The notes under the pieces were generated by a model. It worked only from the letters and a program-made list of their open reading frames with translations. It searched no databases and was not told the DNA's origin. Of a stretch of DNA of 64,000 bases, positions 30,217-53,615 are shown piece after piece. The stretch is taken from positions 1 to 64,000 of IMG/VR virus record IMGVR_UViG_3300028393_000019; one strand, given 5' to 3'. The translations under genes and the position numbers were made by a program. Every line of letters starts with the position of its first letter. Position 1 is the stretch's first letter.

Positions 30217-30227
30217 TAGAGGCATAT

Positions 30228-31091: not shown

Positions 31092-31101
31092 AAGGTAAAT
31101 T

Positions 31102-32472: not shown

Positions 32473-32498
32473 AAAAAGGCGCTTGAAGCGCCTTTTTT
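32473..32498 (+). terminator. rho-independent terminator (bidirectional form)
   Basis: AAAAAGGCGCT-TGA-AGCGCCTTTTTT. Confidence 0.85.
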
Positions 32499-32520: not shown

Positions 32521-32528
32521 TATAAATA
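32521..32528 (+). promoter_or_regulatory. T4-type late promoter TATAAATA driving the enzyme island
   Basis: Exact consensus between the terminator and the SD (AAAGGA) of the first halogenase. Confidence 0.75.
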
Positions 32529-32552
32529 CTCGGCAATAGCAAAGGATAAATT

Positions 32553-34169
32553 ATGCAGATAAAAACGGTAATGATTGTTGGTGGTGGTAGTTCTGGCTGG
32601 ATGACTGCGGCCGCATTATCAAAACTATGCCCTCATTTAAAAGTGTCATTGGTAGAGTCTATAAAGATAGGTACTATTGGAGTGGGTGAAAGTACTCTTG
32701 GACATATCAATAAATTTTTTGGTATGCTGGGATTGAAGGATGAAGACTGGATGGCAGAATGCAATGCCACTTACAAAAATTCTATCCGCTTTACCAACTT
32801 TAGAGAAAACGACGGCACTCATTTTGAATATCCGTTCAGTGCGGGGCTGGATTTTACTGACAAGCCTGCGGGCACTGGTGCATGGTCAGAACTGGCAACG
32901 CTATATCCCGAAGAATACACTCCTGAGACTTTTGCAGAATTTTATTGTACTGGTAACACGATGCTGGCCAAATACAACAAACAGACCCGCGATGAAAAAG
33001 GTATTTTGCGTAACTATGATTTTGCATGGGATACTGCATATCATCTTGATGCACAATTGCTAGGACAGTATTTGAAAAATAAAATTGCAATTCCCAACGG
33101 AGTTACACATCTTGATGCAGAGATTCATTCTTATAAAAAAGATTATCTTGGCAATTTAACGGATATTTTGTGTGTTGATGGTACTGTACTCCGTGCAGAT
33201 TTGTTTATTGACTGTACTGGATTTAAATCAATGCTGTTGGAAGGATGGATGGGATCAGAATTTAGATCGTTTGACAAGTATTTGGCAAATGACAGTGCAT
33301 GGGCCTGCCGTATTCCTTATGAAGATCGCGAAAAAGAAATGCACAATATTACTGACTGCCATGCACTTGGTAATGGATGGGTATGGAACATTCCCTTGTG
33401 GAATCGCATAGGAACAGGCTATTGCTATTCATCCAAGTTTACCACAGACGAAGAAGCCAAGCGTGAGTTTCGCAATCACTTGGCAACTACTGGATCAAAA
33501 GAACGTGCAGAAAATGCAGAAATGATGCATGTTAAGATCAAACACGGCCGCAGACGTCGTGCATGGGTGCAGAATGTGGTAGGAGTTGGACTGAGTTATG
33601 GATTTGTCGAACCACTTGAGTCAACTGGATTGCTGACTACACATGAAAATATTATCAAACTTGTGGAGCAGTTGAATCGCCGTCAGGGATACATAACTCG
33701 TACAGAAATTGAAGGCTTTAACTTTTCTGTTGAGAACGAAGTATTACGTTTTAGAGATTTCGTTAGCCAACACTATGCACTTTCTCAAAGAACTGATACT
33801 CCATATTGGCGCTGGTGCACCCAGTTGCATGAGTATTGCCCAGACCAGATGGGAGACTACATGTTGACTCAGGCACAGTATCCCAACTTGATGGCTAACA
33901 TTGTTGGTAATCAACGCTATTACGGTGAGTATGTGGGCAATATGTTTATTGCGGGTGGTATGGGGGTTAAGTCTATCTCGACCAAAGAACTAATCTTTTT
34001 TAATGGTACTAGACAGGCTAAAACGCTCAAACAAGAAGAAATTGGATACACTAAACGTCGATACGAAGAATATAGAGATTATGTAATTGATTACGTGAAA
34101 ACATTACCAAGTCATTATGCATTCTTGAAGAAAGAAATCTATGGCGGAAAAGATGACCACGCTGTGTAA
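32553..34169 (+). CDS. flavin-dependent halogenase, tryptophan halogenase family
   Basis: GGGSSG FAD motif, IGVGEST, catalytic-Lys motif CNATYKNSIRF, FIDCTGF, GWVWNIP, FVEPLESTG. Confidence 0.92.
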   Translation: MQIKTVMIVGGGSSGWMTAAALSKLCPHLKVSLVESIKIGTIGVGESTLGHINKFFGMLGLKDEDWMAECNATYKNSIRFTNFRENDGTHFEYPFSAGLDFTDKPAGTGAWSELATLYPEEYTPETFAEFYCTGNTMLAKYNKQTRDEKGILRNYDFAWDTAYHLDAQLLGQYLKNKIAIPNGVTHLDAEIHSYKKDYLGNLTDILCVDGTVLRADLFIDCTGFKSMLLEGWMGSEFRSFDKYLANDSAWACRIPYEDREKEMHNITDCHALGNGWVWNIPLWNRIGTGYCYSSKFTTDEEAKREFRNHLATTGSKERAENAEMMHVKIKHGRRRRAWVQNVVGVGLSYGFVEPLESTGLLTTHENIIKLVEQLNRRQGYITRTEIEGFNFSVENEVLRFRDFVSQHYALSQRTDTPYWRWCTQLHEYCPDQMGDYMLTQAQYPNLMANIVGNQRYYGEYVGNMFIAGGMGVKSISTKELIFFNGTRQAKTLKQEEIGYTKRRYEEYRDYVIDYVKTLPSHYAFLKKEIYGGKDDHAV

Positions 34170-34953
34170 AACTCTGTTTGGGTGGATGCGTAGAGAATCA
34201 AAACCTTTTATTCGCTTTTACTCGCTAGAGCCAGGTACTGCAACTCTATTTCCTATTGTAAAATCATCATCTATCGATCGTAATTTTTTATCAAATATTC
34301 AACCGGGTGATCAACCAGAAACACTATCTTCAAAAAACTGCCCCGGCATTAAGAAGATTGTGTCAAGCGGTTGGATAGTACCTGCCCCAGCAGACTTTAC
34401 AATAAACACCAACGGTGACGGAATTAGTTTTGACTGGGCTCAACCGTATCGATTCAGTAAAATCACTCCTGGCATGGAAGCGTATGTCAACAGTCATACT
34501 CGCAGTCAAACGGAACCATTGCTCGATGACGAAACTTCTACATTGAAAACTGTAGTGAAAGTTGAAACTCCTTGGCGAATTGAAGCAAGTGACGATACAG
34601 TACTGTTACTAATGCCAGTGACATACAACAACGAAAGCAGATTCTCGGCAGCTACTGGAATATTAGATCCCAAATACGGACACGTTGTTAATATTCAATT
34701 ATTCTGGAAAGTGTTAAATGGAGCAACTACCGTAAAAGCAGGAACACCGTTGTGTCAAATTATTCCAATTTCAAGAAAAGCCTTGTCCGGATCGTTTTAT
34801 GATGTTACAATAGATACAGCTACTGATAATGACACTAAAAAAGAACACGAATTTAACTATGCATCAAACTGTGCATTTTTAGCAAATGATTCGCTGTCTT
34901 CAAGACTAAGCCGTGTAATAACTATTTTAAATAAGTACAAGACTAAAGGATAA
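34141..34953 (+). CDS. DUF6065/dUTPase-fold-like protein (start may be 34153)
   Basis: 'KNCPGI...GWIVPAPADF...KVETPWRI...GILD...VKAGTPLCQIIP'; paralogue of 47600..48430. Confidence 0.55.
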   Translation: MAEKMTTLCKTLFGWMRRESKPFIRFYSLEPGTATLFPIVKSSSIDRNFLSNIQPGDQPETLSSKNCPGIKKIVSSGWIVPAPADFTINTNGDGISFDWAQPYRFSKITPGMEAYVNSHTRSQTEPLLDDETSTLKTVVKVETPWRIEASDDTVLLLMPVTYNNESRFSAATGILDPKYGHVVNIQLFWKVLNGATTVKAGTPLCQIIPISRKALSGSFYDVTIDTATDNDTKKEHEFNYASNCAFLANDSLSSRLSRVITILNKYKTKG

Positions 34954-34956
34954 CCT

Positions 34957-35208
34957 ATGAACTACAAAGAACAACTTCAAACCATCATCGTAAAAATTAC
35001 CGAGCAAAAAGAAGGTGCTAGCGCAGAACTTGCTAAATTGGAAGAAGAGTTTGCTAACGTGAAATTAAATCCGTATGGCATCACAGCCATTGATTTTGCT
35101 AAACGTCAAGAACTCAGCACAGATGTTCTAAAAATGGAAGGCGTACTCATGGGTTTACAACTTGCATTAGAAACATTTGACGGAGCTCAGCAAGGTGATC
35201 CAGCTTAA
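34957..35208 (+). CDS. small helical/coiled-coil hypothetical protein
   Basis: 83 aa, SD AAAGGA, heptad-like E/K/L pattern. Confidence 0.6.
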   Translation: MNYKEQLQTIIVKITEQKEGASAELAKLEEEFANVKLNPYGITAIDFAKRQELSTDVLKMEGVLMGLQLALETFDGAQQGDPA

Positions 35209-35782
35209 GAATGGCGGCTTATTTTTATTTCCTCCAGATGTTTGGAAATTCAAGTACGATTTTAATTTTGAAGAATTAAAACCAAAGATAGATCATTTGT
35301 TGAACATTACTGAGAATAACTCAGAACTTGAATCAGGCGATGCTCTATCTACTGTTGCATTGGACGAAAGTATGCAACCACATTCGTGGGCGGAGTTGGC
35401 ACATTTTCAAAACTGGTTAGGAGAAAAAATTGCTCTTATCCGGAGAGAAAATGCATTCAACTACACACGTTCTGAAGTATCCAGATCATGGGTCAATCGT
35501 CACGGGTTTGGCGGCGAAACAATTGAACACAATCATAATCAAACTACATTCGTAGTAACATGTTATCTTCAGTTACCACCTGATTCGGGATTTATTGAAT
35601 TCAAAGACCCGCTGGAATATCATAAAACTCTTTACCCTATAATTCCTGAAGAAAGTTCTTATCAGGCAGTGCCTTGCGAAACTAATGATGTATTGATATT
35701 TCCTGGATATATGCGTCATAGAGTGCAACAAAATAAAAACAAGACCGACGAACGACTTGTTCTAACGCTCAATATCAAATGA
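35177..35782 (+). CDS. Fe(II)/2OG oxygenase, TIGR02466-like
   Basis: SWVN...EHNH, LIFPGYMRHRV, terminal R.VLT.N; exact start uncertain (TTG). Confidence 0.8.
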   Translation: MTELSKVIQLKNGGLFLFPPDVWKFKYDFNFEELKPKIDHLLNITENNSELESGDALSTVALDESMQPHSWAELAHFQNWLGEKIALIRRENAFNYTRSEVSRSWVNRHGFGGETIEHNHNQTTFVVTCYLQLPPDSGFIEFKDPLEYHKTLYPIIPEESSYQAVPCETNDVLIFPGYMRHRVQQNKNKTDERLVLTLNIK

Positions 35783-36576
35783 GAGAATTCAAAGTTTGCT
35801 ATCCTGATGCCAACAACATCAATAAAGTTCTTAAACTCAAACCCATTAAGGACTTCAATGTCAAGTATGTAAAACTTGACAAGGAAATCGGGTATTGGGT
35901 GTCGGATCACCCGTTTATTGACAACGGTTTTGATATCTTTAGAGAATTAATAGCTTCATTTCCTATACAGAAAGACAATAATCATCCTGATAATATGGAT
36001 CCCAACCCATTTGATACCATACATGTACCCGAGTGGGTCAGTGGAAATATTGTCTCAGTGGTTGAAGAATTTTATCGCATGAGCAACACAAAAACTATCT
36101 TTGTACCGCAACTGCATGAATGGGGTAATGTTTATTTCAAAGCAAAAGCCCGCCCCATAACCTGCTGGCGAATTCCACATATTGATTATATACATGGCTT
36201 GGTTGCAAATTTATGGTTTACAGATCATGATATTACAGACAGCGGAACCAAATTGTATCACTACACCGGCAAGATGTATAACGAAATTTACGACTTTCAG
36301 CAAGATACTGATCATCCAAGATACAAAGAATGGCAACAGTTGGCTGACAAACCTACTCGCGCAGATGCTTGGTTTAATATTCCCGATGAAGAATTACGAA
36401 CTTGGGGATTTGAATGTGTAGGCATTGCCCCAACCAAAGAAGGCACAATGACCTGGTACAATTCAAATGTTTGCCACCTTGCATATATTTCTGAAAAAGT
36501 AGATTTTAGATGGAGTCATACATTTGCATTTAGCCATGAAACACACCCTAGTACTATGGGAGATTTGTTTAGATGA
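35779..36576 (+). CDS. Fe(II)/2OG oxygenase-like (DUF6445-like)
   Basis: RIPHID (HxD), SGTKLY, distal 'YNSNVCHLA', RWS. Confidence 0.65.
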   Translation: MREFKVCYPDANNINKVLKLKPIKDFNVKYVKLDKEIGYWVSDHPFIDNGFDIFRELIASFPIQKDNNHPDNMDPNPFDTIHVPEWVSGNIVSVVEEFYRMSNTKTIFVPQLHEWGNVYFKAKARPITCWRIPHIDYIHGLVANLWFTDHDITDSGTKLYHYTGKMYNEIYDFQQDTDHPRYKEWQQLADKPTRADAWFNIPDEELRTWGFECVGIAPTKEGTMTWYNSNVCHLAYISEKVDFRWSHTFAFSHETHPSTMGDLFR

Positions 36577-37196
36577 ACTATGATTTATATTTTCCAACTC
36601 CCATATGGTGGGAGGATACCAATTTTGATACCGAAGACATGCTTAAACTATGTTATTCAGTAAAAGAACAAGATCCTATTGGAAGAAAATTAAGCAATGA
36701 CGGTGGCTGGCAAAGCAAAGACTTTAGGCCTGGAAAATACCCCGAGCTAAAAGTCTTAGAAGATAGAATAATGGCGCAGGCACAGCAATGTATACGTGAT
36801 TTTGGATTTGATGAAAATTCATGTTTTCCTGTGTTAGAGAATATATGGCTCAATGTCAACGGCAAGCACAATTCCAACATGGTCCATATGCATGATGCAT
36901 CGTTTGTGTCGGGCGTATTTTACCTAAAGGCTCGCCCCGGGCAGGGTAAAATTACCATGTATAAAAATATGATGCAAGATTTTGCCACAATGTCATTTGC
37001 AAATTTAGAAAAATTTACTCAGATCAGCGCATCTGCAATCAGCTATGATCCATTTACTAGTAGGTTGATCATGTTCCCGGGATGGTTGCCTCACGGAGTA
37101 TCTGCTAACGAGTTAGACGAAGATCGAGTTTCACTTTCATTTAATGTAAAAATAATTAGGACCGACGATGAACGCTATAGGCCAACGATTAGTTAA
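36573..37196 (+). CDS. Fe(II)/2OG oxygenase, TIGR02466-like
   Basis: YFPTPIW, GGWQS, WLNVN..HNSNMVHMH, VSGVFYL, MFPGWLPHGV, RVSLSFN. Confidence 0.88.
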   Translation: MNYDLYFPTPIWWEDTNFDTEDMLKLCYSVKEQDPIGRKLSNDGGWQSKDFRPGKYPELKVLEDRIMAQAQQCIRDFGFDENSCFPVLENIWLNVNGKHNSNMVHMHDASFVSGVFYLKARPGQGKITMYKNMMQDFATMSFANLEKFTQISASAISYDPFTSRLIMFPGWLPHGVSANELDEDRVSLSFNVKIIRTDDERYRPTIS

Positions 37197-37893
37197 CGAG
37201 ACCAATCTTCTATACGAGGATAAACCGCATTATTTTAAAAACTTATTACCAGGTGTAAAAGAAATGCTGACCTGGGCTGATGTTGAAAAATGTGCTAACA
37301 ACCCTGCCCTTTATAATTTTGAAATGATTGGTAAAGATAATATCAAAATTGAAATTCCAATGCATAAAAAAGCATGGGTATTTTCTAAACCAGTGCAGGA
37401 TAAGGCATTTATAGTGGATCATATCAACAAAGGCAACGGTTTTGTCATCATGGACTATGGGTTTTACAGTGAAAAGACCAATGAACTACTAAAAATACTT
37501 GAAACAATCTATGATGTAAATGGTGCTATCCACGTGTATGGCGGACTTGCTGATGCAAAGTCATTCTGGATACACGAGGATTATCCGTCTAACTTTATTT
37601 TTCAAGCAGAAGGTAAAACTAGATGGAAAGTGTACAACAATCGGATTTCTGCCATGTATAGAACTGGCACAATGAATCATAAATTAAAACATCAAGACCT
37701 TGACTTGGCATTCGATGTGGTACTTGAACCAGGTGATGCAATATACATACCATCCAGAGCATACCACATTGCAGAACCAATGGGACAGCGATTGAGTATG
37801 AGTGTTCCGTGTTGGACTAGATTGCCTACAGATGATCCCCGCGAAATGAATGACAGAAACAATTATAGGATTAACTATGACAGAAATATTTAA
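37168..37893 (+). CDS. JmjC/cupin-4 (ROXA/YcfD-like) oxygenase
   Basis: SFWIHED..NFIFQAEGKTRWKVY and LEPGDAIYIPSRAYHIA. Confidence 0.82.
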   Translation: MNAIGQRLVNETNLLYEDKPHYFKNLLPGVKEMLTWADVEKCANNPALYNFEMIGKDNIKIEIPMHKKAWVFSKPVQDKAFIVDHINKGNGFVIMDYGFYSEKTNELLKILETIYDVNGAIHVYGGLADAKSFWIHEDYPSNFIFQAEGKTRWKVYNNRISAMYRTGTMNHKLKHQDLDLAFDVVLEPGDAIYIPSRAYHIAEPMGQRLSMSVPCWTRLPTDDPREMNDRNNYRINYDRNI

Positions 37894-38464
37894 ACCAAGG
37901 GAGTACTCGGGGGGTGTGAATTTTGACTATCAGAAAGCCATGTATGCTTATCTAACTGATATCAAGTTTGACTGGCATTACATGGAAGATACTACCACTG
38001 AAAAAACCAATCTTCCACAATATTCTACCCCAGCATTTGGAAATTTATTATACTATTCACAGCACGAATCAAATCCGCACTACGAATTTTTTAAACCGCT
38101 GATTGAAGCATTGGAACAAACCGCTGGATTTAAAATTAAAAAACTGCTGAGAATGCGAGCTGGTATGTTGCTCAACACCAAATATGTACTGCCAGGTATG
38201 CCTTACAAATATAATACGCCTCACATAGATTATGATATTGATCATTATACAGTAGTGTATTATGTGAACGAGTGTGACGGTGATACTGTGGTATTTCGTG
38301 AAATTGCTCCTGCTGAAAAATACTATAGCCTGCACAAGTGTACCCCACACCAAGGAAAGTTCTTGTTGTTTAACGGGCGGCATTATCATGCAAGTACCTG
38401 TCCCAAAGTGTACACCAAGCGTATTGCTATCACAATCAATTTTACTGCTGATATAGATGGATAA
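37877..38464 (+). CDS. Fe(II)/2OG oxygenase
   Basis: PHIDYD, YYVNECDGDT, FNGRHYHAS, RIAITINF; ATG 37877 has SD AGGA, preferred over 37850. Confidence 0.8.
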   Translation: MTEIFKPREYSGGVNFDYQKAMYAYLTDIKFDWHYMEDTTTEKTNLPQYSTPAFGNLLYYSQHESNPHYEFFKPLIEALEQTAGFKIKKLLRMRAGMLLNTKYVLPGMPYKYNTPHIDYDIDHYTVVYYVNECDGDTVVFREIAPAEKYYSLHKCTPHQGKFLLFNGRHYHASTCPKVYTKRIAITINFTADIDG

Positions 38465-39164
38465 TTTGTTTTTAAATAAATTCATAAACACCAAAAACTT
38501 GAGTAGTTCAGAGTTTATTAAATCTCACGACATTAAAAATCGGTTCCTGTATCCATATATGCCGACCATTGTGATTGATAATTTCTATAACGATCCTAAT
38601 TTATGGAGAGAATTTGCGTTAGATCAAAAGTTTTTCAAAGGTGATCGGGGTAACTGGCCCGGCTTGAGAACTGAATTGTTGCATAAACTACACTATGATC
38701 TATTTAAAATCACGTTGAAAAAAATATTATTTGTTTTAAAAGATTACGGAATTACTCAAGTGGTCGAACTACAAACAGGATTCCAACTGATAGCTGAAGA
38801 GTATGGGCGCGGCTGGGTGCATGATGATGATCCATCGTTTCAATATGCAGGCATCATATATCTAAGCAAGGACGCTCCAATTGGTTCCGGCACTACAATA
38901 TATGAAGACTCTGTGGACTTTGACGGAGATGTATATAACAAAATGTTTGAAACAGATGTTAACAATGCCTCTGCAGAAGATCGAGAAATATATGCAAAAT
39001 ACAGAGCAGAACAAGTGTCAAAATTTAAAAAAAGTATAGTGGTAGAAAATGTATACAATCGCTTTGTATTGTTTGATTCGCGTTGTTGGCACAGTGCTGA
39101 TAATTTTTTTGGTAGCACACCGGACGATACTAGATTAACGCAGGTATTTTTTATCAAACAATGA
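38457..39164 (+). CDS. Fe(II)/2OG oxygenase (DUF6445-like)
   Basis: IVIDNFY.DP, WPGLRT, GWVHDD, AGIIYL, SGTTIY, YNRFVLFDSRCWHSA..FG, RLTQVFF. Confidence 0.78.
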   Translation: MDNLFLNKFINTKNLSSSEFIKSHDIKNRFLYPYMPTIVIDNFYNDPNLWREFALDQKFFKGDRGNWPGLRTELLHKLHYDLFKITLKKILFVLKDYGITQVVELQTGFQLIAEEYGRGWVHDDDPSFQYAGIIYLSKDAPIGSGTTIYEDSVDFDGDVYNKMFETDVNNASAEDREIYAKYRAEQVSKFKKSIVVENVYNRFVLFDSRCWHSADNFFGSTPDDTRLTQVFFIKQ

Positions 39165-39772
39165 AAACATTAAAACAACCAATCAAGGTTATTGATAACT
39201 TTTTTGAAGCTCCTGATTTATGGCAACACTATGCCCTGAAGCAACAGTTTGCTCGAGACAACAACTCAACTTGGCCCGGAACTCGAACTACTACACTGGA
39301 TCAATTGGATATGGAACTGTTTAATTCCGTTGCATCTACTCTCATTAGTCATACACACGGTAAACAGTTCTTTTCTCTCTTAAAGATAAACTTTGCATCT
39401 GTTGACAGCAGTTATAATATTGGATGGATGCACCAAGACGAGCCGCAGTACAATGTTGCTGGCGTCATATTCTTGAATAAATTTGCTCCTGCCAATACTG
39501 GATTATCGTTTTACACAAAGGTTGCAGATAATAATCAAGACTACAACAGTTTGTTCTTTGAAGAATTAAAAGCTGATCCAGCCGATCGATCAGCGTTCGT
39601 TAAATTTAAAGAAGAACAACGTAGATTGTTCAAGCGGAATATGACTGTTGAAAATATTTTTAATAGATGTGTGATGTTTCCACCGGAACAATTCCATGCG
39701 GCTGACGGATACTTTGGCAATACACTAGATGATGCTAGATTAACAATTAATTTTTTTGGAATTTCAATATGA
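39161..39772 (+). CDS. Fe(II)/2OG oxygenase (DUF6445-like), tandem paralogue of 38457
   Basis: VIDNFFEAP, WPGTRT, GWMHQD, AGVIFL, FNRCVMF...FHAA.GYFG, RLTINFF. Confidence 0.78.
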   Translation: MKTLKQPIKVIDNFFEAPDLWQHYALKQQFARDNNSTWPGTRTTTLDQLDMELFNSVASTLISHTHGKQFFSLLKINFASVDSSYNIGWMHQDEPQYNVAGVIFLNKFAPANTGLSFYTKVADNNQDYNSLFFEELKADPADRSAFVKFKEEQRRLFKRNMTVENIFNRCVMFPPEQFHAADGYFGNTLDDARLTINFFGISI

Positions 39773-41523: not shown

Positions 41524-42158
41524 AACAAGATTACTATATTATCAAAAATGCTATCAGCAAAGAACTGGCTGAATTTATTGCTCTTGAGTTTAGCATGATG
41601 GAAACTACTTGCAAGCATTTGTATCCCGATGCTGATTTGTCAGATTTATGTAAAGGCACATTCGCTCGTTACAGTCCGCTAATGGTAGAAGCATTGTCAG
41701 TATCACTACAGCCCAAGATTGAACAAGCAGTTGGAATGAAATTGTTGCCAACATACTCTTATGCACGTATCTACTACAAAGACACTGATTTAAAATCCCA
41801 TTTTGATCGTGCAAGTTCTGAAGTCACAGTTAGCGTGTGCCTACAACAAACAGCCACATGGCCCTTGTATGTAAAAAATGCCGAAGGAGTAATCCACGCA
41901 ATCAATTTGGAAGTGGGCGATGCTGGAATTTATTGCGGCCGCAAGCACGAACACTGGCGAGAACCTTTACAAGAAGAAGGTCAGCATGTTCAAGCATTTT
42001 TACAATACGTTGACGCTGAAGGTGACGATGCCTGGCTTAAATGGGATACTCGACCCTGTTTAGGGTTACCTTTTGAGTATGCCAGCCAGGCAATACAATC
42101 AGAATTAAGTCACATTAAGAATGTTAAAAACTTAATGGATTCTGTTGGTAAACTGTAA
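41520..42158 (+). CDS. Fe(II)/2OG oxygenase
   Basis: PTYSYARIY...HFDRASSEVTVSVCL, GDAGIYCG..HEHWRE, QAFLQY. Confidence 0.8.
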   Translation: MKQDYYIIKNAISKELAEFIALEFSMMETTCKHLYPDADLSDLCKGTFARYSPLMVEALSVSLQPKIEQAVGMKLLPTYSYARIYYKDTDLKSHFDRASSEVTVSVCLQQTATWPLYVKNAEGVIHAINLEVGDAGIYCGRKHEHWREPLQEEGQHVQAFLQYVDAEGDDAWLKWDTRPCLGLPFEYASQAIQSELSHIKNVKNLMDSVGKL

Positions 42159-42374
42159 TCAAGCGGGTTTGCTGTTAATAAACACAGCACCTTCTGGAAC
42201 TTTGGATTCTTCAACTTTCAAAGGGCCAGCCACGTGCCAACGTGGTCCGTCGACATCATTGAATATCACACCTGCTTCGTTACGTGTGTTTGCATAACAA
42301 TACTTTTCAATGGTATGTAATGCTGATGTGTTTGGGTTATCACCATCTCTTAAAATTACTTTGTAAATGTTCAT
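42159..42374 (-). CDS. small hypothetical protein
   Basis: 71 aa with strong SD (AGGAG) and its own TAAATA upstream on the minus strand. Confidence 0.65.
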   Translation of the reverse strand: MNIYKVILRDGDNPNTSALHTIEKYCYANTRNEAGVIFNDVDGPRWHVAGPLKVEESKVPEGAVFINSKPA

Positions 42375-42396
42375 TTACTATCTCCTACGATAAATG

Positions 42397-42402
42397 TATT
42401 TA
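42397..42402 (-). promoter_or_regulatory. late promoter core (CTAAATA)
   Basis: Overlaps the stop of the 514-aa halogenase, upstream of the SD of the 71-aa gene. Confidence 0.45.
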
Positions 42403-43944
42403 GTTTGTTTTATCCAGCCATTCTTCAATGGTCCAAAATGGCTCAACAAGAATCTTGTACTTGTCTCTGTTGATATTTAGTACTTTTTCTCCTACCTTGA
42501 GAAACTTTTCATTTGTTTTTGCTAAATTGGTGTGATCAAATACAGACAGCCCCTGCAACACCATGAGCCAAGCACTTGCAGAATATCCGTGACAATACGG
42601 TTCAGGGCGATCGCTGTTAAAATATTCTCCCCAAGCAGTTAATTTTTCCTTTAAACTTGGAGGAATACGAAATTCGTCATATGCATGACTTTTCCAGAAG
42701 TCAGTGTCTCTACGTTGCCCTCTATAATGCAATGCTAGAAAGTCTCTAATATCTTCGGTAATATACCATATGCGATCGTTGAATCTCTTAATTGTTTCAG
42801 TGGGATGGTTGGCTTCGTAAGGGCTCCAATAGTCCTGTAAACCAAACAAACTTTCAACAATAACTGCAATTCCGTTAGCTTCAAGCGGTTCTAAAAAGCC
42901 ACTACTGAGTCCTATAGCAACAACATTGTTTTTCCAAGCGTTGCGCATCATGCCAGGGTCGAACTGAAAATTAGCAATTGGTTCTATCTTTTTATTGAAT
43001 CGTAATTCAGCTTCCTGCACTGCTTGATCAAGTGTTATATGATCCGGATCATAAATGTATCCGTTGCCAGACCTGTTGCGAATATTGATGTTCCAACTCC
43101 AACCGTATTTCATAGCAGTGGCATTGGTAGTCACACACGGACAAGTTTCATCCCACCATGCCACAACTGCTCTGGATGGAAAATAACTGGTGGCATCAAC
43201 AATTGGTTCTTTCAGTTGTTTACCCAACAGTAATCTTGCAAATCCTGAGCAATCAAAAAACCAGTCACCTTCTGCAACACGCCCATTGGTTAGTGTTATA
43301 CTGGTAACGTCACCGTTGAGATCCTGCATGGTCTGCTGGAACTCGCCTTCTAATAAAGTGATACCCCGTTCCAGTCCTATTTTTTTAAGATAGGCAGCGG
43401 TGCTTCTGCTTTCAAAATGCCACATGGGCACACATGGAATATCAGAGGCAGCTCCAAACGGTACTTTGTTCTCTTTGATAAAATAATTGGCATAGAATGC
43501 GTCTGCTGTAGGAATACGGTTTGCCAATATGGTACGCATGTATCTATCCTTGGCGCTCTCGGCATTCATGAGGGACATCAAAGTTCCCACAGTCAATTCA
43601 TCTCGATTTTCTGCAAAATAATCAGTCCAACCGTTGAGATATGGTGCATAATCAGTTTGAAGTGAGTGAATAAATTCTGTGCCTACTCCATTCCAGTCAG
43701 TGAACTTGCCACCCAACTTGGGTGTGGCATTAACCTGTCGAATAAAATCATTTATATCAATTCGTAAATGTTTTAATAATGTTACAAATGTAGTATTACC
43801 GCTTTCGCCTGCAATAATAGGCGGCTGATTAGGATTCTCAATAACAGTAACTTGTGCCCTGTGCCAATTGCGTTGGACGAACAGGGCAGTTAACCATCCT
43901 GCTGTACCGCCTCCTAATACAACAACTTTAGAATTTGTATACAT
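42400..43944 (-). CDS. flavin-dependent halogenase family protein (divergent)
   Basis: GGGTAG, IIAGESG, NATPKLGGKF, FFDCSGF, GWSWNIN, FLEPLEANG. Confidence 0.88.
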   Translation of the reverse strand: MYTNSKVVVLGGGTAGWLTALFVQRNWHRAQVTVIENPNQPPIIAGESGNTTFVTLLKHLRIDINDFIRQVNATPKLGGKFTDWNGVGTEFIHSLQTDYAPYLNGWTDYFAENRDELTVGTLMSLMNAESAKDRYMRTILANRIPTADAFYANYFIKENKVPFGAASDIPCVPMWHFESRSTAAYLKKIGLERGITLLEGEFQQTMQDLNGDVTSITLTNGRVAEGDWFFDCSGFARLLLGKQLKEPIVDATSYFPSRAVVAWWDETCPCVTTNATAMKYGWSWNINIRNRSGNGYIYDPDHITLDQAVQEAELRFNKKIEPIANFQFDPGMMRNAWKNNVVAIGLSSGFLEPLEANGIAVIVESLFGLQDYWSPYEANHPTETIKRFNDRIWYITEDIRDFLALHYRGQRRDTDFWKSHAYDEFRIPPSLKEKLTAWGEYFNSDRPEPYCHGYSASAWLMVLQGLSVFDHTNLAKTNEKFLKVGEKVLNINRDKYKILVEPFWTIEEWLDKTN

Positions 43945-45433
43945 GTGGGTTTGCTCGTTGTTTAATTATTTCTAGTGCTTGTCTATGTGAATAGAACGTG
44001 TCATTTTCATCACTTAGCTTGGTGGCTTTCATAAATTCATCAGTGTCTGCTGAGTGTGCTAACATATGAGCTTCATACTTGTCTCGAATACTTGTATTAT
44101 CAAACATACCCAGACCATGCATAACTTGACCATAATTTAAATATGAAAACAGTATCATGGGATGATTAAACAGATTAATGTTTGGATATCCTTTCTTGAA
44201 ATAGTCTAAGTATTTTGCGTTAAATTCTGTAGGTACAATTTCATTTTTGCACCAACGCCAGAACTCACTGTTGTCACGTTTGGTAAAATAATGTAGTTGT
44301 ATAAAGTCTATAATATTTTCTGAAATAGTTTTCATATGTTTGTTATAGCGTTCGGCAGTTAGTTCTTCACCTCGTTCATAAAAGAACAAATCAGGTAGCA
44401 TCATAGATGCTTGCTGTATAGTAGTGCCAATACTGCTAGCTTCGAGCGGCTCGACAAATATACCGCTTAACCCAACCATAACACAATTTTTAATCCAGTA
44501 GTTTTCTACATAGCCTGCACTAAATTTAACCTTCTTACCAATAGTAAGTGTCTGATCAATGCCAAGATTATTTTTATAATGTTGTGAAACTTCATCAAAC
44601 GCATGGGTCTCATTCATAAACTCATCGCAGAATACATAGCCATTGCCGTAACGCTCTTGCGTGGGTATGCGCCACACCCATCCACTGCTTAGGGCCGTTG
44701 CTTCCGTGTAGGAAGGTATAACTTCAGTGTAATCTGTTGGAAATGCAATAGCACTGTTCATAGGCAACTGCTTGGAACAGTCAACCCATTTAGCACCTAA
44801 CTTGCTGCCAATAATTCTTTTGAATCCACTACAGTCAATATAAAACTCATATGCATGATGTGTACCGGTTACGTCAACTAGTTCTTTAACATACCCATCT
44901 TCATCAAGAATGACATCTTCAACTTCAGTGTCTATAACTGTAATTTTTCTTTCTTTACACACTCTATGTAAGAAGTCATTGAGTTTATTAGTGTCAAAGT
45001 GATATTGACTTAATATATCATGTACCGGCTCAATATGCAGACCGTCTTGCGCCTTGCGCCACACGGTATCTAACGGATCCCAATCTTCACCAATCATACG
45101 CAACCAAGTAAATGGAAGTCCGTGTACTTTCGACACAGAACCATACTGCTCTGATAAACTATGGAAATAACTTTTGCCATCACCGTTCCAGTCAGTAAAC
45201 TTAATACCTATTTTAAATGTAGCACCAGTTTCTCGAACTAACGAAAAAATATCAATATCCACGTGCCGCATAAACACACGCCAGTGCTCAGTTGATCCTT
45301 CGCCTACCCCGATAATACCTATCTTTGAACTTTCAATCATGGTGATTTTAATCTCTGGCCATGCTTTGCGTAGCATCAATGCGGTGACTAGGCCGCTAGT
45401 TCCGCCACCGAGTATACAAACTGAATTGATCAT
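43928..45433 (-). CDS. flavin-dependent halogenase family protein
   Basis: GGGTSG, IGVGEGS, GATFKIGIKF, YIDCSGF, GWVWRIP, FVEPLEASS. Confidence 0.9.
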   Translation of the reverse strand: MINSVCILGGGTSGLVTALMLRKAWPEIKITMIESSKIGIIGVGEGSTEHWRVFMRHVDIDIFSLVRETGATFKIGIKFTDWNGDGKSYFHSLSEQYGSVSKVHGLPFTWLRMIGEDWDPLDTVWRKAQDGLHIEPVHDILSQYHFDTNKLNDFLHRVCKERKITVIDTEVEDVILDEDGYVKELVDVTGTHHAYEFYIDCSGFKRIIGSKLGAKWVDCSKQLPMNSAIAFPTDYTEVIPSYTEATALSSGWVWRIPTQERYGNGYVFCDEFMNETHAFDEVSQHYKNNLGIDQTLTIGKKVKFSAGYVENYWIKNCVMVGLSGIFVEPLEASSIGTTIQQASMMLPDLFFYERGEELTAERYNKHMKTISENIIDFIQLHYFTKRDNSEFWRWCKNEIVPTEFNAKYLDYFKKGYPNINLFNHPMILFSYLNYGQVMHGLGMFDNTSIRDKYEAHMLAHSADTDEFMKATKLSDENDTFYSHRQALEIIKQRANPHVYKF

Positions 45434-46932
45434 AATGCGTATTCTATTCCTTTTAATCGCTGTTTAACAAGGGCAATAGCATCCTTGTGTTTCATCCACC
45501 CATCTGTAGTAGAACTATGCATTTGTTTAATGTTGCTTTCACACCGCTCTCTATATTTTGCTCCGTATTGTGCATCGTATAACTGTTTAATTTTAGCAGT
45601 ATCAAACATTCTTAGCCCATGCATAACTTGTGTCCAGTTTAAACAATCATAAATTCTAAACAACGACATTAAACCGTCTTCTGGTAATACTATTTGATTA
45701 ATAAAATTTGTTTTAAAATTTTCTATGTTAGCTTTATTAAACTCTGTCATCTTTATATCATGTTTACACCAGCGCCAGAACTCTGTATCTTCTCGCTGTG
45801 TGAAATAGTGTAGCTGAATAAAGTCTAACACGTTTAGCATCATATCGTCAAATACTCTATTATACTCGTTAATTGTTGCAGAGTCATTACGATGCCAGTT
45901 CCATAATCCAGCAACTAATAATCTTGATTGTTGAATAGTAGTTGAGATACTGCTAGCTTCAAGGGGCTCTACAAAGTTACTGCTAAGACCAATACTTACA
46001 CAGTTCTTGATCCATGCCTTGTTTACTCTTCCTGATACAAAGTTAATCTTTCTGCCAATATTAATAGTGTCTTTAAAATGTGTTTGTATTTCTGCGATCG
46101 CTTGATCTTCAGTAATAAATTGATCGCTGAATACGTATCCATTACCAAAGCGCCCCTGTACCGGACTGCGCCAGTGCCATCCACTGTCCATGGCTTTCGA
46201 TAATGTGTATACTGGTATGTCATCTTGATCAGTAGTTTGAAAGGCTACTGCACTGTTCATTGGTAAATGAGCCGACCAGTCAACCCACGTAGCACCAAGT
46301 TTGGATGCAATTACTCGTCTAAATCCGCTACTGTCAATAAAGAAGTCTGCAGAGTAGTGTTGATTATCAGAGCTAACAATTGATTTGACAAAACCAGCAT
46401 CGTCTAAAACACAGTCTACAACTTCAGCTTCAACTATAGATATACCTCGTCCAGTACATAATTTTTCTAAGTATGCATTTAATTTTTCACTGTCAAAGTG
46501 AAACTGATAGTAATCAGTTAACGGTTCCGCCACCATGTTGTCTTCAAGGATCATCTTCCAGTGCATATCCTCAGCTTTTATACCGTCACCTATTATTCGC
46601 ATCATAGAGTATGCCGCGCCAGTATGTGGATCCATTCCGACATATCCTTCGGGTAAACTATGAAAATAGCTAGTACCGTCACCGTGCCAATTTTCAAACT
46701 TAATACCTGTTTTAATAGTCGCACCGCAATGCTCAATTAATTCTATAAAACTAATACCAACTGCATTAGCAAATCGTGTCCAGTGTTCAGTAGATCCCTC
46801 TCCGACACCTATGGTTCCAATTTTGCTGGATTTGACCAAGGTAATATCAAGGTGCGGAATAGATGCCTTGAGGTACAGTGCATTCATTAAACCAGCGTTG
46901 CCGCCACCTAGTACACAAATTGAGTTTATCAT
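45430..46932 (-). CDS. flavin-dependent halogenase family protein
   Basis: Start set at MINSICVLGGGNAG (46932) by alignment to its neighbour MINSVCILGGG; GATIKTGIKF, FIDSSGF, GWHWRSP, FVEPLEASS. Confidence 0.9.
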   Translation of the reverse strand: MINSICVLGGGNAGLMNALYLKASIPHLDITLVKSSKIGTIGVGEGSTEHWTRFANAVGISFIELIEHCGATIKTGIKFENWHGDGTSYFHSLPEGYVGMDPHTGAAYSMMRIIGDGIKAEDMHWKMILEDNMVAEPLTDYYQFHFDSEKLNAYLEKLCTGRGISIVEAEVVDCVLDDAGFVKSIVSSDNQHYSADFFIDSSGFRRVIASKLGATWVDWSAHLPMNSAVAFQTTDQDDIPVYTLSKAMDSGWHWRSPVQGRFGNGYVFSDQFITEDQAIAEIQTHFKDTINIGRKINFVSGRVNKAWIKNCVSIGLSSNFVEPLEASSISTTIQQSRLLVAGLWNWHRNDSATINEYNRVFDDMMLNVLDFIQLHYFTQREDTEFWRWCKHDIKMTEFNKANIENFKTNFINQIVLPEDGLMSLFRIYDCLNWTQVMHGLRMFDTAKIKQLYDAQYGAKYRERCESNIKQMHSSTTDGWMKHKDAIALVKQRLKGIEYAL

Positions 46933-47012
46933 AACCAGTTCTTCTCGAAGTTTTTTTGTAGTGTAATATATATCATTGTACACGCAGATGTTCTGCAGAC
47001 CTGAAAGGAACT

Positions 47013-47603
47013 ATGTCCGAAAAGCAACTATGGCCTTTGTTTTCAAAGCCAATTTTTAAAACACACTTAGACGTTTCTAAAGTGGACTTGTCTAATATCA
47101 AATGGGCAAGGAACTATCAAAACTGGATTAGCGAATCTCAAAAAGTGCTTGACGATCCTGTATTAACTGACTTTGCCAATCAGATTTCAGATAACCTTGT
47201 GGAATACTTTTACGGAATCATGGGTGCAAATCCAAATGTAAAGATGTATGTTACTGAAAGTTGGTTTAACAAAACAGAAAAAGGACAAAGTCATCATAGA
47301 CATTGGCATCCTAACAGTATCTTATCAGGTGTAGTTTATCTTGACAGCGAAGGCGACAGCGGCCGCATTAAATTTATTACCAGCCAGTATGACACAATTG
47401 AATACAATATTGTTGAGTCTAACTTGTATAATTCACGTAGTTGGTCAGTAGTTCCGGAAGCTGGTACTATGCTAATATTCCCCAGTAATGTAGAGCACAT
47501 GGTTGAAGAGTACATTGGCGACAAACCGCGATTTAGTCTGTCGTTTAACACATTTATCAGCGGTGACATCAACGTAGATCCGTTGACTCGACTTAAAATT
47601 TAA
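47013..47603 (+). CDS. Fe(II)/2OG oxygenase, TIGR02466-like
   Basis: LFSKPI, SWFN...SHHRHWHPNSILSGVVYL, LIFPSNVEHMV, RFSLSFN; SD AAAGGA. Confidence 0.88.
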   Translation: MSEKQLWPLFSKPIFKTHLDVSKVDLSNIKWARNYQNWISESQKVLDDPVLTDFANQISDNLVEYFYGIMGANPNVKMYVTESWFNKTEKGQSHHRHWHPNSILSGVVYLDSEGDSGRIKFITSQYDTIEYNIVESNLYNSRSWSVVPEAGTMLIFPSNVEHMVEEYIGDKPRFSLSFNTFISGDINVDPLTRLKI

Positions 47604-48430
47604 ATTTTATTCTTGGGATATTTGTTTCTAAAATAGCGAAACAGGTCAGTAATAATCCTGATTTTGTTACCCACTGTATCTGTCTTAGGGAATCGGCTGT
47701 GATTTGAAAACACATAAGCATCCTCTATTTCACGATCGACGTCGTCTGCACTATCAACTATAAATTCTATATTGTTACTGTTCAGTAACTCTCTGCTGAT
47801 CGGTACATACTGTACAAGCGGTGTGCCTGCTTTGACAAGAACTTCGCCTTCAATTATATGCCAAAATAGTTGTACACTGATTGCATGCATGTAGCGTGGA
47901 TCAACAATGCCAATAGCCGCAGTAAAGCGTTCTTCATTGGTATAAGTCACTGGAATTTGTAGGAATACAATATCGTCACTGGCTTTGACACGCCATGGCG
48001 TTTCCACTTTAACCCCACTATGATGATACTGTTTTTCGCTGTGCGGGCATTCTCGAGGTATTAACGGTTCAACCTGCGGAGGACTGTGCCAGCTGATGTA
48101 ATAATCAGTGCCGCCAAATGTATATTTGTTGCTGTGACGTTTGAATGAAAATGGATGCTCCCAGGATATATCTGTAGGGCCCTTGCCTGTTTTGATAATA
48201 AAATCAGCCGGCGCACAAATCACATAGCCCGCTCGATTAATTTGTTTTATCGCCGGACAATTTAGTACAGTTTGATTGCCTTGTTCAGGACGATTGCGAT
48301 CAAGATTACCTAATCCGTTCCAGTCGCGCTCAACAAGTGTATTTTTTATAACTGGATAAATGGTTGATACATTTTGATCAAGGGAATAAAATCTTACCCA
48401 GCTTTTTTTCTTTTTAAACCAATCAAACAT
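47600..48430 (-). CDS. DUF6065/dUTPase-fold-like protein, paralogue of 34141
   Basis: WVRFYSL, LNCPAI...GYVICAPADF, KVETPWRV, GIVD, VKAGTPLVQYVP. Confidence 0.55.
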   Translation of the reverse strand: MFDWFKKKKSWVRFYSLDQNVSTIYPVIKNTLVERDWNGLGNLDRNRPEQGNQTVLNCPAIKQINRAGYVICAPADFIIKTGKGPTDISWEHPFSFKRHSNKYTFGGTDYYISWHSPPQVEPLIPRECPHSEKQYHHSGVKVETPWRVKASDDIVFLQIPVTYTNEERFTAAIGIVDPRYMHAISVQLFWHIIEGEVLVKAGTPLVQYVPISRELLNSNNIEFIVDSADDVDREIEDAYVFSNHSRFPKTDTVGNKIRIITDLFRYFRNKYPKNKI

Positions 48431-53610: not shown

Positions 53611-53615
53611 ACAAT

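What the first reader, a model, noticed from the sequence alone, without database searches (positions are those of the whole stretch)
32521..48430. Late-promoter-driven island of 4 flavin-dependent halogenases and 12 Fe/2OG-JmjC oxygenases inside the virion module: candidate virion-tailoring pathway
Seen: about 16 kb holding 4 tryptophan-halogenase-family genes, 12 oxygenases from several subfamilies (TIGR02466-like x4, DUF6445-like x3, PHID/YYVN type x2, JmjC x1, two others), 2 DUF6065-like paralogues and 2 small ORFs. The island is bounded by fibre-tip genes and neck genes and begins at a perfect TATAAATA. No NRPS/PKS, transporter, flavin reductase or DNA-modification partner is present in the window. 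Known: these families halogenate aromatic residues or hydroxylate Pro/Asp/Asn/His/Lys/Arg, and smaller sets occur in cyanophages. Inference: late timing, position and the many non-identical enzymes suggest an assembly line that modifies virion proteins (fibres), rather than auxiliary metabolism.
Basis: partly seen in the sequence, partly recalled or inferred. Interest (0 to 1): 0.92.

Follow-up and report, generated by a model that had tools for sequence, protein, structure and literature searches.

The report
Cyanophage halogenase–oxygenase island beside adhesin genes
This is a real, enlarged copy of an enzyme gene cluster already described in the ocean cyanophage Syn9; it always sits directly behind the phage's receptor-binding fibre-tip genes under a late-type promoter, which fits enzymes that chemically decorate virion proteins but does not prove it.

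Summary
Window 32553-48430 carries 20 genes: 4 flavin-dependent halogenases, 12 Fe/2-oxoglutarate-type oxygenases, 2 paralogues with a dUTPase-like fold and 2 small conserved ORFs. All 16 enzymes keep their catalytic motifs. A perfect TATAAATA lies 25 nt before the first halogenase.

The island is not a new kind of thing. It is syntenic with Syn9 gp40-gp54, which Iyer et al. (2010) described as 10 dioxygenases, 2 halogenases and a dUTPase-fold protein. G01 is the orthologue of VirX1, the characterised Syn10 iodinase.

What I add:
- The island is always anchored to the Gly/His-rich gp38-like adhesin genes and a 164-aa gp40-like gene. This holds in 74 of 74 uncultured loci and in all 11 cultured phages that have gp40-like.
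- The ATAAATA late motif is conserved in relatives while its flanks diverge.
- No scaffold-building enzyme is present in the window.

These points favour protein tailoring of fibre components (confidence 0.4), but there is no direct evidence. Enzyme number does not track adhesin number. The three minus-strand halogenases lack the late motif. Single homologues sit among replication genes in other cyanophages. Secondary-metabolite and host-directed readings remain open.

The parts
29365..31956 (+). Three paralogous gp38-like adhesins (283, 287 and 284 aa; Gly 21-23%, His 4-5%), at 29365-30216, 30228-31091 and 31102-31956. They are the upstream anchor of the module.
   Evidence: phrog_863 E 1e-47 to 1e-56. 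PF21722 Gly_rich_2. Composition. An adhesin lies directly upstream of gp40-like in 74 of 74 loci.
31961..32455 (+). gp40-like protein (164 aa, Trp 4.3%, conserved C-terminal W-K-R-Y-P-G-W motif). It always lies between the adhesins and the first halogenase.
   Evidence: phrog_1787. No Pfam hit. Found in 20 phage records (11 phages), each time next to the VirX1-like halogenase. Alignment. The AlphaFold2 model is poor (pLDDT 58).
32473..32498 (+). Terminator-like hairpin (GGCGC-TTGAA-GCGCC) followed by a T-run, after gp40-like.
   Evidence: Read directly from the sequence. An equivalent hairpin is present in most relatives L003-L018 (not in L008). The consensus scanner missed it.
32521..32528 (+). 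TATAAATA, a T4-type late-promoter motif 25 nt upstream of G01.
   Evidence: [T/C/G]ATAAATA is conserved at this position in L003-L020. NATAAATA is the cyanomyovirus late promoter according to PMC2984593.
32553..34169 (+). G01, flavin-dependent halogenase, orthologue of VirX1 (Syn10).
   Evidence: PF04820 E 2.7e-105. PDB 6QGM VirX1 E 2.9e-193. Keeps GGGSSG, AT.K, WVWNIP and EPLES.
34141..34953 (+). G02, dUTPase-fold protein with invariant Cys67-Pro68 (Syn9 gp43 family).
   Evidence: phrog_7084. AlphaFold2 pLDDT 83. Foldseek best hits are dUTPases, E 2e-4, TM 0.65 on the target. 196 homologues, none with a Pfam domain and none named as cellular. Invariant residues.
34957..35208 (+). G03, 83-aa protein (Syn9 gp44 family) with an invariant core KLNPYGIT.IDF.KR.
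   Evidence: Alignment of 13 homologues. Among cultured phages it is found only in Syn9, Syn10 and S-CREM1.
35177..42158 (+). Eleven tandem oxygenase genes: G04 35177-35782, G05 35779-36576, G06 36573-37196, G07 (JmjC) 37168-37893, G08 37850-38464, G09 38457-39164, G10 39161-39772, G11 39769-40383, G12 40376-40984, G13 40981-41523, G14 41520-42158.
   Evidence: Pfam, NCBIfam and PHROG hits. Invariant HxD..H triad in G05, G07, G08, G09, G10, G12 and G14; HxH..H in G04, G06, G11 and G13; each with a distal Arg. hhalign links. The nearest solved relatives of G07 are the NO66, MINA53 and YcfD protein hydroxylases.
42159..42374 (-). G15, 71-aa conserved ORF at the end of the minus-strand block.
   Evidence: Conserved in 10 distinct relatives.
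42400..46983 (-). Three halogenases: G16 42400-43944, G17 43928-45433, G18 45430-46983. The true start of G18 is probably the ATG at 46932.
   Evidence: PF04820 E 3e-89 to 2e-103. Motifs. PDB neighbours. No ATAAATA upstream.
47013..47603 (+). G19, PF13759/TIGR02466 oxygenase. It is inverted here compared with relatives L012-L016.
   Evidence: PF13759 E 2e-21. TIGR02466 E 2.9e-18. Orientation.
47600..48430 (-). G20, second dUTPase-fold paralogue. It is contiguous with the NUDIX-gp15-gp14 minus-strand late operon, whose ATAAATA is at 51792-51798.
   Evidence: 38% identical to G02. phrog_7084 E 7e-47. Operon layout.

Best explanation
The island is the enlarged form of a conserved cyanomyovirus cassette: gp38-like adhesins, then a gp40-like protein, then halogenase(s), a dUTPase-fold protein and a tandem array of dioxygenases. 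Its plus-strand part is transcribed from a T4-type late promoter, at the same time as the virion genes.

It encodes only tailoring enzymes. The most likely job is therefore oxidative post-translational decoration of phage-made proteins of the fibre tip: hydroxylation by the twelve Fe/2OG enzymes and halogenation of aromatic side chains by the four flavin-dependent halogenases, which would use host-supplied reduced flavin. The candidate substrates are the Gly/His-rich adhesins, the Trp-rich gp40-like protein, or both.

Shown: gene content, intact catalytic motifs, conserved synteny, the conserved late motif, and the absence of scaffold-building genes in the window.

Inferred: late timing, a protein substrate, and which protein it is.
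For: 1. All 4 halogenases keep the FAD motif, the catalytic Lys and the EPLE Glu. All 12 oxygenases keep a metal triad and a distal Arg.
2. Each enzyme has its own orthologue in the same order in 18 uncultured relatives, down to 53% JmjC identity, and in Syn9, S-CREM1, S-RIM44 and P-TIM40. The paralogues are therefore non-redundant.
3. The 5' anchor is constant. An adhesin lies directly upstream of gp40-like in 74 of 74 loci, and a VirX1-like halogenase lies directly downstream in 57 of 64, with 6 more after one intervening oxygenase.
4. Among 50,697 phage records, gp40-like and the Gly/His adhesin domain occur in the same 11 phages, always beside the halogenase. The downstream neighbours differ between genomes: small unannotated genes in Syn9 and S-CREM1, neck genes in S-RIM44, a helicase in S-WAM1 and P-TIM40.
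5. S-H38, the closest cultured relative of S-CREM1 according to PMC9964418, gave no gp40-like or adhesin match, and the oxygenase genes seen in the part I read lie among replication and auxiliary metabolic genes rather than beside fibre genes.
6. The late motif is enriched at gene starts and conserved before the island. In Syn9, S-CREM1 and S-RIM44 it lies before gp40-like, and the gap from gp40-like to the halogenase is only 15-39 nt.
7. The nearest solved relatives of G07 are ribosomal-protein His/Arg hydroxylases. VirX1 has a large, open active site that accepts bulky substrates (PMC8407142).
8. There is no NRPS, PKS, ATP-grasp enzyme, transporter or flavin reductase in 64 kb.
Against: - There are no expression, proteomic or chemical data.
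- Genes that are adjacent are inherited together, so the co-occurrence is partly trivial.
- Enzyme number does not scale with adhesin number.
- The minus-strand halogenase trio has no late motif.
- JmjC and other oxygenase homologues occur singly among replication or auxiliary metabolic genes in Syn30 and S-H38. Phage halogenases also occur away from fibre genes, in S-B64, S-SSM7 and HTVC008M.
- From my own knowledge, known peptide-acting flavin halogenases act on RiPP precursor peptides, not on folded proteins.
- The adhesins hold only one Trp each.
Confidence: 0.4

Rival explanations
1. Secondary-metabolite pathway, the proposal of Iyer et al. 2010. The halogenases and dioxygenases successively modify a free amino acid, a small peptide or another host metabolite into a halogenated, hydroxylated compound, such as an antibiotic, a siderophore-like molecule or a signal, that is released at lysis.
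For: - This is the published reading of the Syn9 cluster, made by analogy with cephamycin C and with the proteobacterial clusters of halogenase, SapC, TonB receptor and JmjC (PMC2938197).
- VirX1 halogenates many small aromatic compounds in vitro (PMC8407142).
- G01 is closer in sequence to true tryptophan halogenases than to any other solved enzyme apart from VirX1.
- G03 could be a small precursor or carrier, since it has an invariant core.
Against: - There is no scaffold-forming enzyme, carrier protein, methyltransferase, transporter or immunity gene in 64 kb.
- Twelve distinct hydroxylases are many for one small molecule.
- G03 is missing from S-RIM44, S-WAM1 and P-TIM40, which keep the rest of the cassette.
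- A metabolite pathway gives no reason for the constant anchoring to adhesin genes and a late promoter.
Confidence: 0.25
2. Host-directed enzymes. The oxygenases would hydroxylate host proteins such as ribosomal proteins or translation factors, or consume 2-oxoglutarate to steer the NtcA nitrogen-stress response. Under this reading the position beside the fibre genes is incidental.
For: - Sullivan et al. 2010 proposed 2OG modulation and DNA repair for cyanophage 2OG oxygenases (PMC3037559).
- The JmjC enzyme is nearest to ribosomal oxygenases.
- Homologues sit among replication or auxiliary metabolic genes in Syn30 and S-H38.
Against: - Burning 2OG does not need twelve conserved, non-redundant enzymes, and it does not need four halogenases.
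- A late promoter is an odd choice for host takeover.
- The order of the cassette is conserved across several genera.
Confidence: 0.15
3. No joint function. The site after the fibre genes would be a permissive, hyperplastic slot where accessory genes accumulate and duplicate, each acting on its own.
For: - T4-like cyanophages have known hyperplastic regions inside the structural module (PMC2984593).
- Enzyme counts vary from about 5 to 12.
- G19 is inverted in this lineage.
Against: - One-to-one orthology and the same gene order hold from this window to Syn9.
- The paralogues are old, at 23-45% identity, and all remain catalytically intact.
- gp40-like, the adhesin domain and the halogenase show the same presence and absence.
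Confidence: 0.12
4. Nucleotide or DNA modification. The two dUTPase-fold proteins, with the neighbouring NUDIX hydrolase and dNMP kinase, would bind pyrimidine nucleotides, and the halogenases and oxygenases would modify those.
For: - G02 has a dUTPase-like fold with an invariant Cys.
- A NUDIX gene abuts G20 and a dNMP kinase lies at 52680-53369.
Against: - The G02 profile has no sequence-level similarity to any solved dUTPase or dCTP deaminase.
- Late timing and a position in the fibre module are wrong for DNA precursor synthesis.
- There is no polymerase, glycosylase or transferase partner in the window.
Confidence: 0.05

Closest known systems
Syn9 gp40-gp54 dioxygenase/halogenase cluster (Iyer, Abhiman, de Souza & Aravind 2010, PMC2938197), also present in Syn10, S-CREM1, S-RIM44, S-WAM1 and P-TIM40
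   Same: The gene order is the same: adhesins, gp40-like, halogenase(s), dUTPase-fold protein with a conserved Cys, small gp44-like ORF, then a tandem array of dioxygenases from several families that includes one MINA/NO66-type JmjC and ends with the gp54-like enzyme.
   Different: This version is larger: 12 dioxygenases against 10, and 4 halogenases against 1-2. It adds a convergent minus-strand block of three divergent halogenases, a small ORF and a second dUTPase-fold paralogue. It has its own terminator and TATAAATA between gp40-like and the first halogenase. It ends at the neck genes rather than at the block of small unannotated genes that follows the cluster in Syn9.
VirX1, the flavin-dependent halogenase of cyanophage Syn10 (PDB 6QGM)
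   Same: G01 matches it over its full length at E 2.9e-193, and tblastn against the Syn10 genome gives 52.6% identity. G01 has the same motifs.
   Different: Only G01 is of this type. G16-G18 are 27-30% identical to G01, and their nearest solved relatives are BrvH-like or putative halogenases and RebH. The natural substrate of VirX1 is not given in the text I could read (PMC8407142).
Proteobacterial clusters of Trp halogenase, SapC, a TonB-dependent receptor and a JmjC or gp52-like dioxygenase (Iyer et al. 2010)
   Same: They combine one to three Trp-type halogenases with a JmjC enzyme and a Syn9-gp52-like dioxygenase.
   Different: The phage island has no TonB receptor. I could not test whether the dUTPase-fold protein corresponds to SapC. 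The search of bacterial genomes returned only three contigs: two were near-identical to known cyanophages and the third was an uncharacterised 6-kb MAG fragment.
Viral and bacterial hydroxylases of collagen-like or tail-collar proteins: the giant-virus prolyl/lysyl hydroxylases (from my own knowledge) and the bacterial operons predicted by Iyer et al. 2010
   Same: The working idea is the same: 2OG oxygenases encoded next to Gly-rich or fibre-like structural proteins, which they are predicted to hydroxylate.
   Different: The adhesins here carry a PF21722 Gly-rich domain. Read by eye, their sequences show runs of Gly rather than a regular Gly-X-Y repeat. No halogenases are involved in those systems, and no sulfotransferase is present here.

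Membership tests
Flavin-dependent (tryptophan-type) halogenases, PF04820 | Profile match above Pfam's gathering score | tested here: met
   G01, G16, G17 and G18 score 300-353 bits against a cut-off of 21.
Flavin-dependent (tryptophan-type) halogenases, PF04820 | GxGxxG flavin-binding motif, catalytic Lys, WxWxIP motif and the Glu of the EPLE motif | tested here: met
   All four have GGGxxG, AT.K and (F/L/V)EPLE(S/A). WxWxIP is exact in G01 and G17 and variant in G16 (WSWNIN) and G18 (WHWRSP). The residue roles are from the literature (PMC8407142).
Flavin-dependent (tryptophan-type) halogenases, PF04820 | A partner flavin reductase encoded nearby | tested here: not met
   No family match to a flavin reductase among the window proteins scanned. 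A host reductase would have to serve.
Flavin-dependent (tryptophan-type) halogenases, PF04820 | Halogenating activity and the natural substrate | not testable with these tools
   Only the Syn10 orthologue of G01 (VirX1) has been assayed, and only on unnatural substrates.
Fe(II)/2-oxoglutarate dioxygenase (double-stranded beta-helix) superfamily, including JmjC | Profile match to a member family | tested here: met
   Nine of twelve match by Pfam or NCBIfam, G08 and G12 just below Pfam's gathering score. G13 is linked by phrog_81 and hhalign at 91%. G05 is linked by the phrog_1644 it shares with the DUF6445 protein G09. G14 rests only on the literature (Syn9 gp54) and on its motif, so on its own it is inconclusive.
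Fe(II)/2-oxoglutarate dioxygenase (double-stranded beta-helix) superfamily, including JmjC | HxD/E...H metal triad and a basic residue that binds 2OG | tested here: met
   HxD..H plus Arg is invariant in G05, G07, G08, G09, G10, G12 and G14. The PF13759-type enzymes G04, G06, G11 and G13 have HxH..H plus Arg. For G19 I confirmed only two invariant His residues (H99, H162) and an Arg. None has the HxA/G signature of 2OG-dependent halogenases.
Syn9-type cyanophage dioxygenase/halogenase cluster (Iyer et al. 2010) | Tandem array of about 10 dioxygenases from at least 5 families including one MINA/NO66-type JmjC, at least one Trp halogenase, and a dUTPase-fold protein with a conserved Cys | tested here: met
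   Gene-for-gene synteny with Syn9 (L002) and S-CREM1 (L001) is shown.
Syn9-type cyanophage dioxygenase/halogenase cluster (Iyer et al. 2010) | One dioxygenase fused to tetratricopeptide repeats | not tested
   No TPR Pfam match appeared, but I made no targeted search.
T4-type late transcription unit | NATAAATA motif at promoter distance from the first gene, conserved in relatives | tested here: met
   TATAAATA lies 25 nt upstream of G01 and ATAAATA is conserved in L003-L020. Seven of the 10 copies in the window lie at gene starts. This is not met for the minus-strand trio G18-G16.
T4-type late transcription unit | Measured late expression dependent on gp55, gp33 and gp45 | not testable with these tools
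   The Syn9 RNA-seq paper (Doron et al. 2016) is not held.
Biosynthetic gene cluster for a secondary metabolite (NRPS, PKS or RiPP) | A scaffold-forming enzyme or precursor peptide, plus export or immunity genes | tested here: not met
   No such family appears in 64 kb. G03 is a possible small substrate, but it is absent from several relatives that keep the cassette.
Collagen-type prolyl/lysyl hydroxylation systems | A substrate with Gly-X-Y collagen repeats encoded alongside the hydroxylase | tested here: inconclusive
   The adhesins are Gly-rich (PF21722). Read by eye, their sequences show Gly runs rather than a regular Gly-X-Y repeat. I ran no formal repeat search.

The most novel reading that the evidence does not exclude
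The receptor-binding adhesins, the gp40-like protein or both are enzymatically halogenated and multiply hydroxylated before assembly. This family of cyanophages would then carry chemically tailored fibre tips. That would be the first enzymatic halogenation of a virion protein, and a new way for a phage to tune adsorption, stability or host range.
Probability: 0.3. Interest if true: 0.85.

Novelty: new member of a known kind. Interest (0 to 1): 0.55.

Why it matters
The Syn9-type cluster has been on record since 2010 (Iyer et al.), and one of its enzymes has become a biocatalysis tool. In the papers I could read, its biological role was still only conjectured: an antibiotic, 2-oxoglutarate control or DNA repair.

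This window shows that the cassette can grow to 16 enzymes. The comparison made here shows that the cassette is tied to a particular type of adhesin and to a gp40-like protein, under late-type promoters. That narrows the search for the natural substrate to a few phage proteins. Those can be checked by mass spectrometry in phages that are already in culture (Syn9, S-CREM1, P-TIM40).

If the substrate is a virion protein, this would be a new class of phage structural modification. It would also give VirX1-type halogenases a natural substrate. If the substrate is not a virion protein, the metabolite reading gains ground.

Tried and rejected
- Near-identity DNA search of the island against 50,697 phage records found no match. 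The window comes from an uncultured 265,680-bp IMG/VR contig.
- Pfam at E up to 10 found nothing for G02, G05, G13, G14, G15 or G20.
- The AlphaFold2 model of gp40-like was too poor to search with (pLDDT 58).
- The G02 profile against PDB sequences found nothing, so the dUTPase link is at fold level only.
- Search for cellular homologues of G02: two of the three genome hits were near-identical to known cyanophages (98.3% to P-TIM40 and 98-99% to S-CREM1) in a bacterial assembly and a MAG, and the third was an uncharacterised 6-kb MAG contig. A bacterial origin or context is therefore unsupported.
- The sigma-70 promoter and terminator scans of the island were at the level of shuffled controls. 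Nothing can be read from them, and the scanner missed the hairpin at 32473-32498.
- Co-variation of enzyme number with adhesin number: the adhesin count is nearly constant, so there is no signal.
- tblastn with the adhesin N-terminus was uninformative.
- The Syn9 transcriptome paper, the VirX1 primary paper and a metatranscriptome paper were either not held or silent on these genes.
- The S-CREM1 supplement did not show which ORFs were found in virions.
- hhalign with shallow local alignments did not link G14 or G05 confidently to the other families.

Full report
**What is there**

The window is a stretch of a T4-like cyanomyovirus (Kyanoviridae).
- Outside the island it encodes fibre proteins, including two giants of 2925 and 3701 aa.
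- It also encodes three gp38-like adhesins, neck proteins gp13, gp14 and gp15, the sheath, the tube, a head-closure protein and the large terminase, plus a NUDIX hydrolase and a dNMP kinase.
- It has no close DNA match among 50,697 deposited phage genomes.
- It is identical, in the parts compared, to an uncultured IMG/VR contig of 265,680 bp.

**Check of the observation**

Between 32553 and 48430 there are 20 genes.
- Four are flavin-dependent halogenases of the tryptophan-halogenase family (PF04820, E 3e-89 to 3e-105). They are old paralogues, 27-45% identical.
- All four keep GGGxxG, the AT.K lysine, a WxWxIP-like motif and the EPLE glutamate.
- G01 is the orthologue of VirX1, the Syn10 iodinating halogenase (PDB 6QGM, E 2.9e-193).
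- Nine oxygenases are recognised by Pfam or NCBIfam, two of them (G08, G12) just below Pfam's gathering score: four PF13759/TIGR02466, one JmjC_2, two PF13640-like and two DUF6445.
- Three more are assigned indirectly. G05 shares phrog_1644 with the DUF6445 protein G09. G13 hits phrog_81 and aligns with G04 at 91% hhalign probability. G14 is the orthologue of Syn9 gp54.
- Across orthologues all twelve keep an invariant metal triad and a distal arginine. The triad is HxD..H in seven and HxH..H in the PF13759-type enzymes.
- G02 and G20 are paralogues (38% identical). They have no Pfam match. A confident AlphaFold2 model (pLDDT 83) finds dUTPases as its best structural neighbours.
- G03 and G15 are small ORFs conserved in relatives.

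**It is a known kind of cluster**

The island is syntenic, gene for gene, with Syn9 gp40-gp54 and S-CREM1 ORF68-80.
- Iyer et al. (2010, PMC2938197) described the Syn9 version as ten tandem dioxygenases of at least five families, including the MINA/NO66-type gp49, two tryptophan halogenases and a dUTPase-fold protein with a conserved cysteine. They proposed synthesis of a halogenated secondary metabolite.
- Sullivan et al. (2010) proposed that cyanophage 2OG oxygenases act on 2-oxoglutarate and nitrogen signalling.
- S-SCSM1 has 24 such genes scattered through its genome.
- The window is therefore a larger member of this kind: 12 oxygenases, 4 halogenases and a second dUTPase-fold gene.
- The extra genes form a convergent minus-strand block, G20 to G15. 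That block is conserved in 15 uncultured relatives, some of which also have a second plus-strand halogenase.

**New comparative evidence**

1. Order and content are conserved.
   - Eighteen IMG/VR loci found with the JmjC protein keep the same gene order down to 53% JmjC identity.

2. The 5' anchor is constant.
   - In 80 loci found with the gp40-like protein, an adhesin lies directly upstream in 74 of the 74 with enough flank.
   - A VirX1-like halogenase lies directly downstream in 57 of 64, and after one oxygenase in 6 more.

3. The same holds in cultured phages.
   - The gp40-like protein occurs in 20 records, which represent 11 phages: Syn9, Syn10, S-CREM1, S-RIM44, S-WAM1, S-SZBM1, P-RSM6, P-TIM40, Sf-FP1, Sf-CH3 and Sf-FR1.
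   - In each it lies next to the halogenase.
   - The Gly/His-rich adhesin domain is detectable in exactly those phages.
   - The genes downstream of the island differ: small unannotated genes in Syn9 and S-CREM1, neck genes in S-RIM44 and here, a helicase in S-WAM1 and P-TIM40.
   - S-H38, reported as the closest cultured relative of S-CREM1 (PMC9964418), gave no gp40-like or adhesin match, and the stretch I read carries a few oxygenase genes among replication and auxiliary metabolic genes.

4. The promoter evidence is consistent.
   - NATAAATA is the accepted cyanomyovirus late promoter (PMC2984593).
   - In this window ATAAATA is depleted, with 10 copies against 18 expected, and 7 copies lie no more than 33 nt upstream of same-strand gene starts. 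These include the giant fibre gene, gp14 and the sheath gene.
   - The copy before G01 follows a hairpin with a T-run. It is conserved in relatives whose surrounding sequence has diverged.
   - In Syn9, S-CREM1 and S-RIM44 the motif lies before the gp40-like gene, which runs into the halogenase gene with a gap of only 15-39 nt.

**What argues against, or limits, the virion-tailoring idea**

- Adjacent genes are inherited together, so part of the co-occurrence is trivial.
Adhesins number 2-3 everywhere, while oxygenases range from about 5 to 12 and halogenases from 1 to 5.
- The three minus-strand halogenases have no late motif upstream. In relatives their operon is headed by G19 and by further oxygenase genes.
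- Homologues of the JmjC and other oxygenases sit singly among replication or auxiliary metabolic genes in Syn30 and S-H38. Phage halogenases also occur outside the fibre context.
- Each adhesin has only one tryptophan, although tyrosine and histidine are plentiful.
- I found no expression or modification data. The Syn9 transcriptome paper is not in the library.

**Most likely mechanism**

The island holds sixteen intact tailoring enzymes and no scaffold-forming enzyme, transporter or flavin reductase. The scaffold must therefore come from elsewhere.

Twelve non-redundant hydroxylases retained as one-to-one orthologues imply many distinct sites. That fits proteins better than one small molecule.

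Four further observations point the same way:
- the anchoring to adhesin and gp40-like genes;
- the late-type promoters;
- the protein-hydroxylase affinity of the JmjC enzyme;
- the open active site reported for VirX1.

The best-supported model is late, post-translational hydroxylation and halogenation of fibre-tip components. I put it at 0.4. The rivals are the secondary-metabolite reading at 0.25, host-directed action at 0.15, no joint function at 0.12 and nucleotide modification at 0.05.

**Verdict**

The object is a new and larger member of a known cluster type. Its interest lies in the sharpened, directly testable hypothesis about the natural substrate, not in the island's existence.

Noticed in passing
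L107 (NZ_RMVE01000006.1, 'Nonlabens xiamenensis 1Q3') and L106 (CAYVOK010000041.1, 'Acidimicrobiaceae' MAG): A 188,235-bp contig of a flavobacterial isolate assembly is 98.3% identical over 19 kb to cyanophage P-TIM40. A MAG contig is 98-99% identical to S-CREM1. Both look like phage sequence filed under bacterial genomes.
   Followed up: yes
L108:1518-4795: A 6-kb MAG contig carries three tandem paralogues of the dUTPase-fold protein next to a G14-like oxygenase. This is an expansion of the least understood component of the cassette.
   Followed up: no
window 34957-35208 (G03): This 83-aa protein has an invariant core, K-L-N-P-Y-G-I-T-x-I-D-F-x-K-R, from this window to Syn9 gp44, while both of its ends vary. 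It could be a small substrate or an adaptor. It is absent from S-RIM44, S-WAM1 and P-TIM40.
   Followed up: partly
window 31961-32455; L007:3011-3682, L009:217-885, L012:4619-5281: The gp40-like protein has conserved Trp residues and a C-terminal W-K-R-Y-P-G-W-K-G motif in a region predicted to be disordered. Some relatives add a C-terminal extension of about 55 aa.
   Followed up: partly
window 47013-47603 (G19) and 46933-47012: G19 is on the plus strand here. In L012-L016 it is on the minus strand, directly upstream of the halogenase trio in the minus-strand gene block, so a local inversion seems to have left G18 with an 80-bp upstream region that lacks a late motif. G18 probably starts at the ATG at 46932, not at the GTG at 46983.
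   Followed up: partly
window 29365-31956: The three tandem gp38-like adhesin paralogues form the most GC-rich part of the window (0.49 against about 0.42). They share a His-rich C-terminal motif, HPQGGHF.H.HQGH.
   Followed up: partly
window 34141-34953 (G02): The invariant strings APADF, TPWR, GILDPKYGH and AGTPLxQ resemble dUTPase motifs 1-4 as I recall them, with no motif 5. The profile search against PDB sequences found nothing, so this is only a lead.
   Followed up: partly
window 31948-31955: The second perfect TATAAATA overlaps the last codons and the stop of adhesin 3 (E-E-Y-K-stop) and ends 5 nt before the gp40-like start codon. It may be a coding by-product rather than a promoter.
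   Followed up: partly
window 53370-53715: A 346-bp non-coding gap before the sheath gene is the longest in the window. It ends with a CATAAATA late motif.
   Followed up: no
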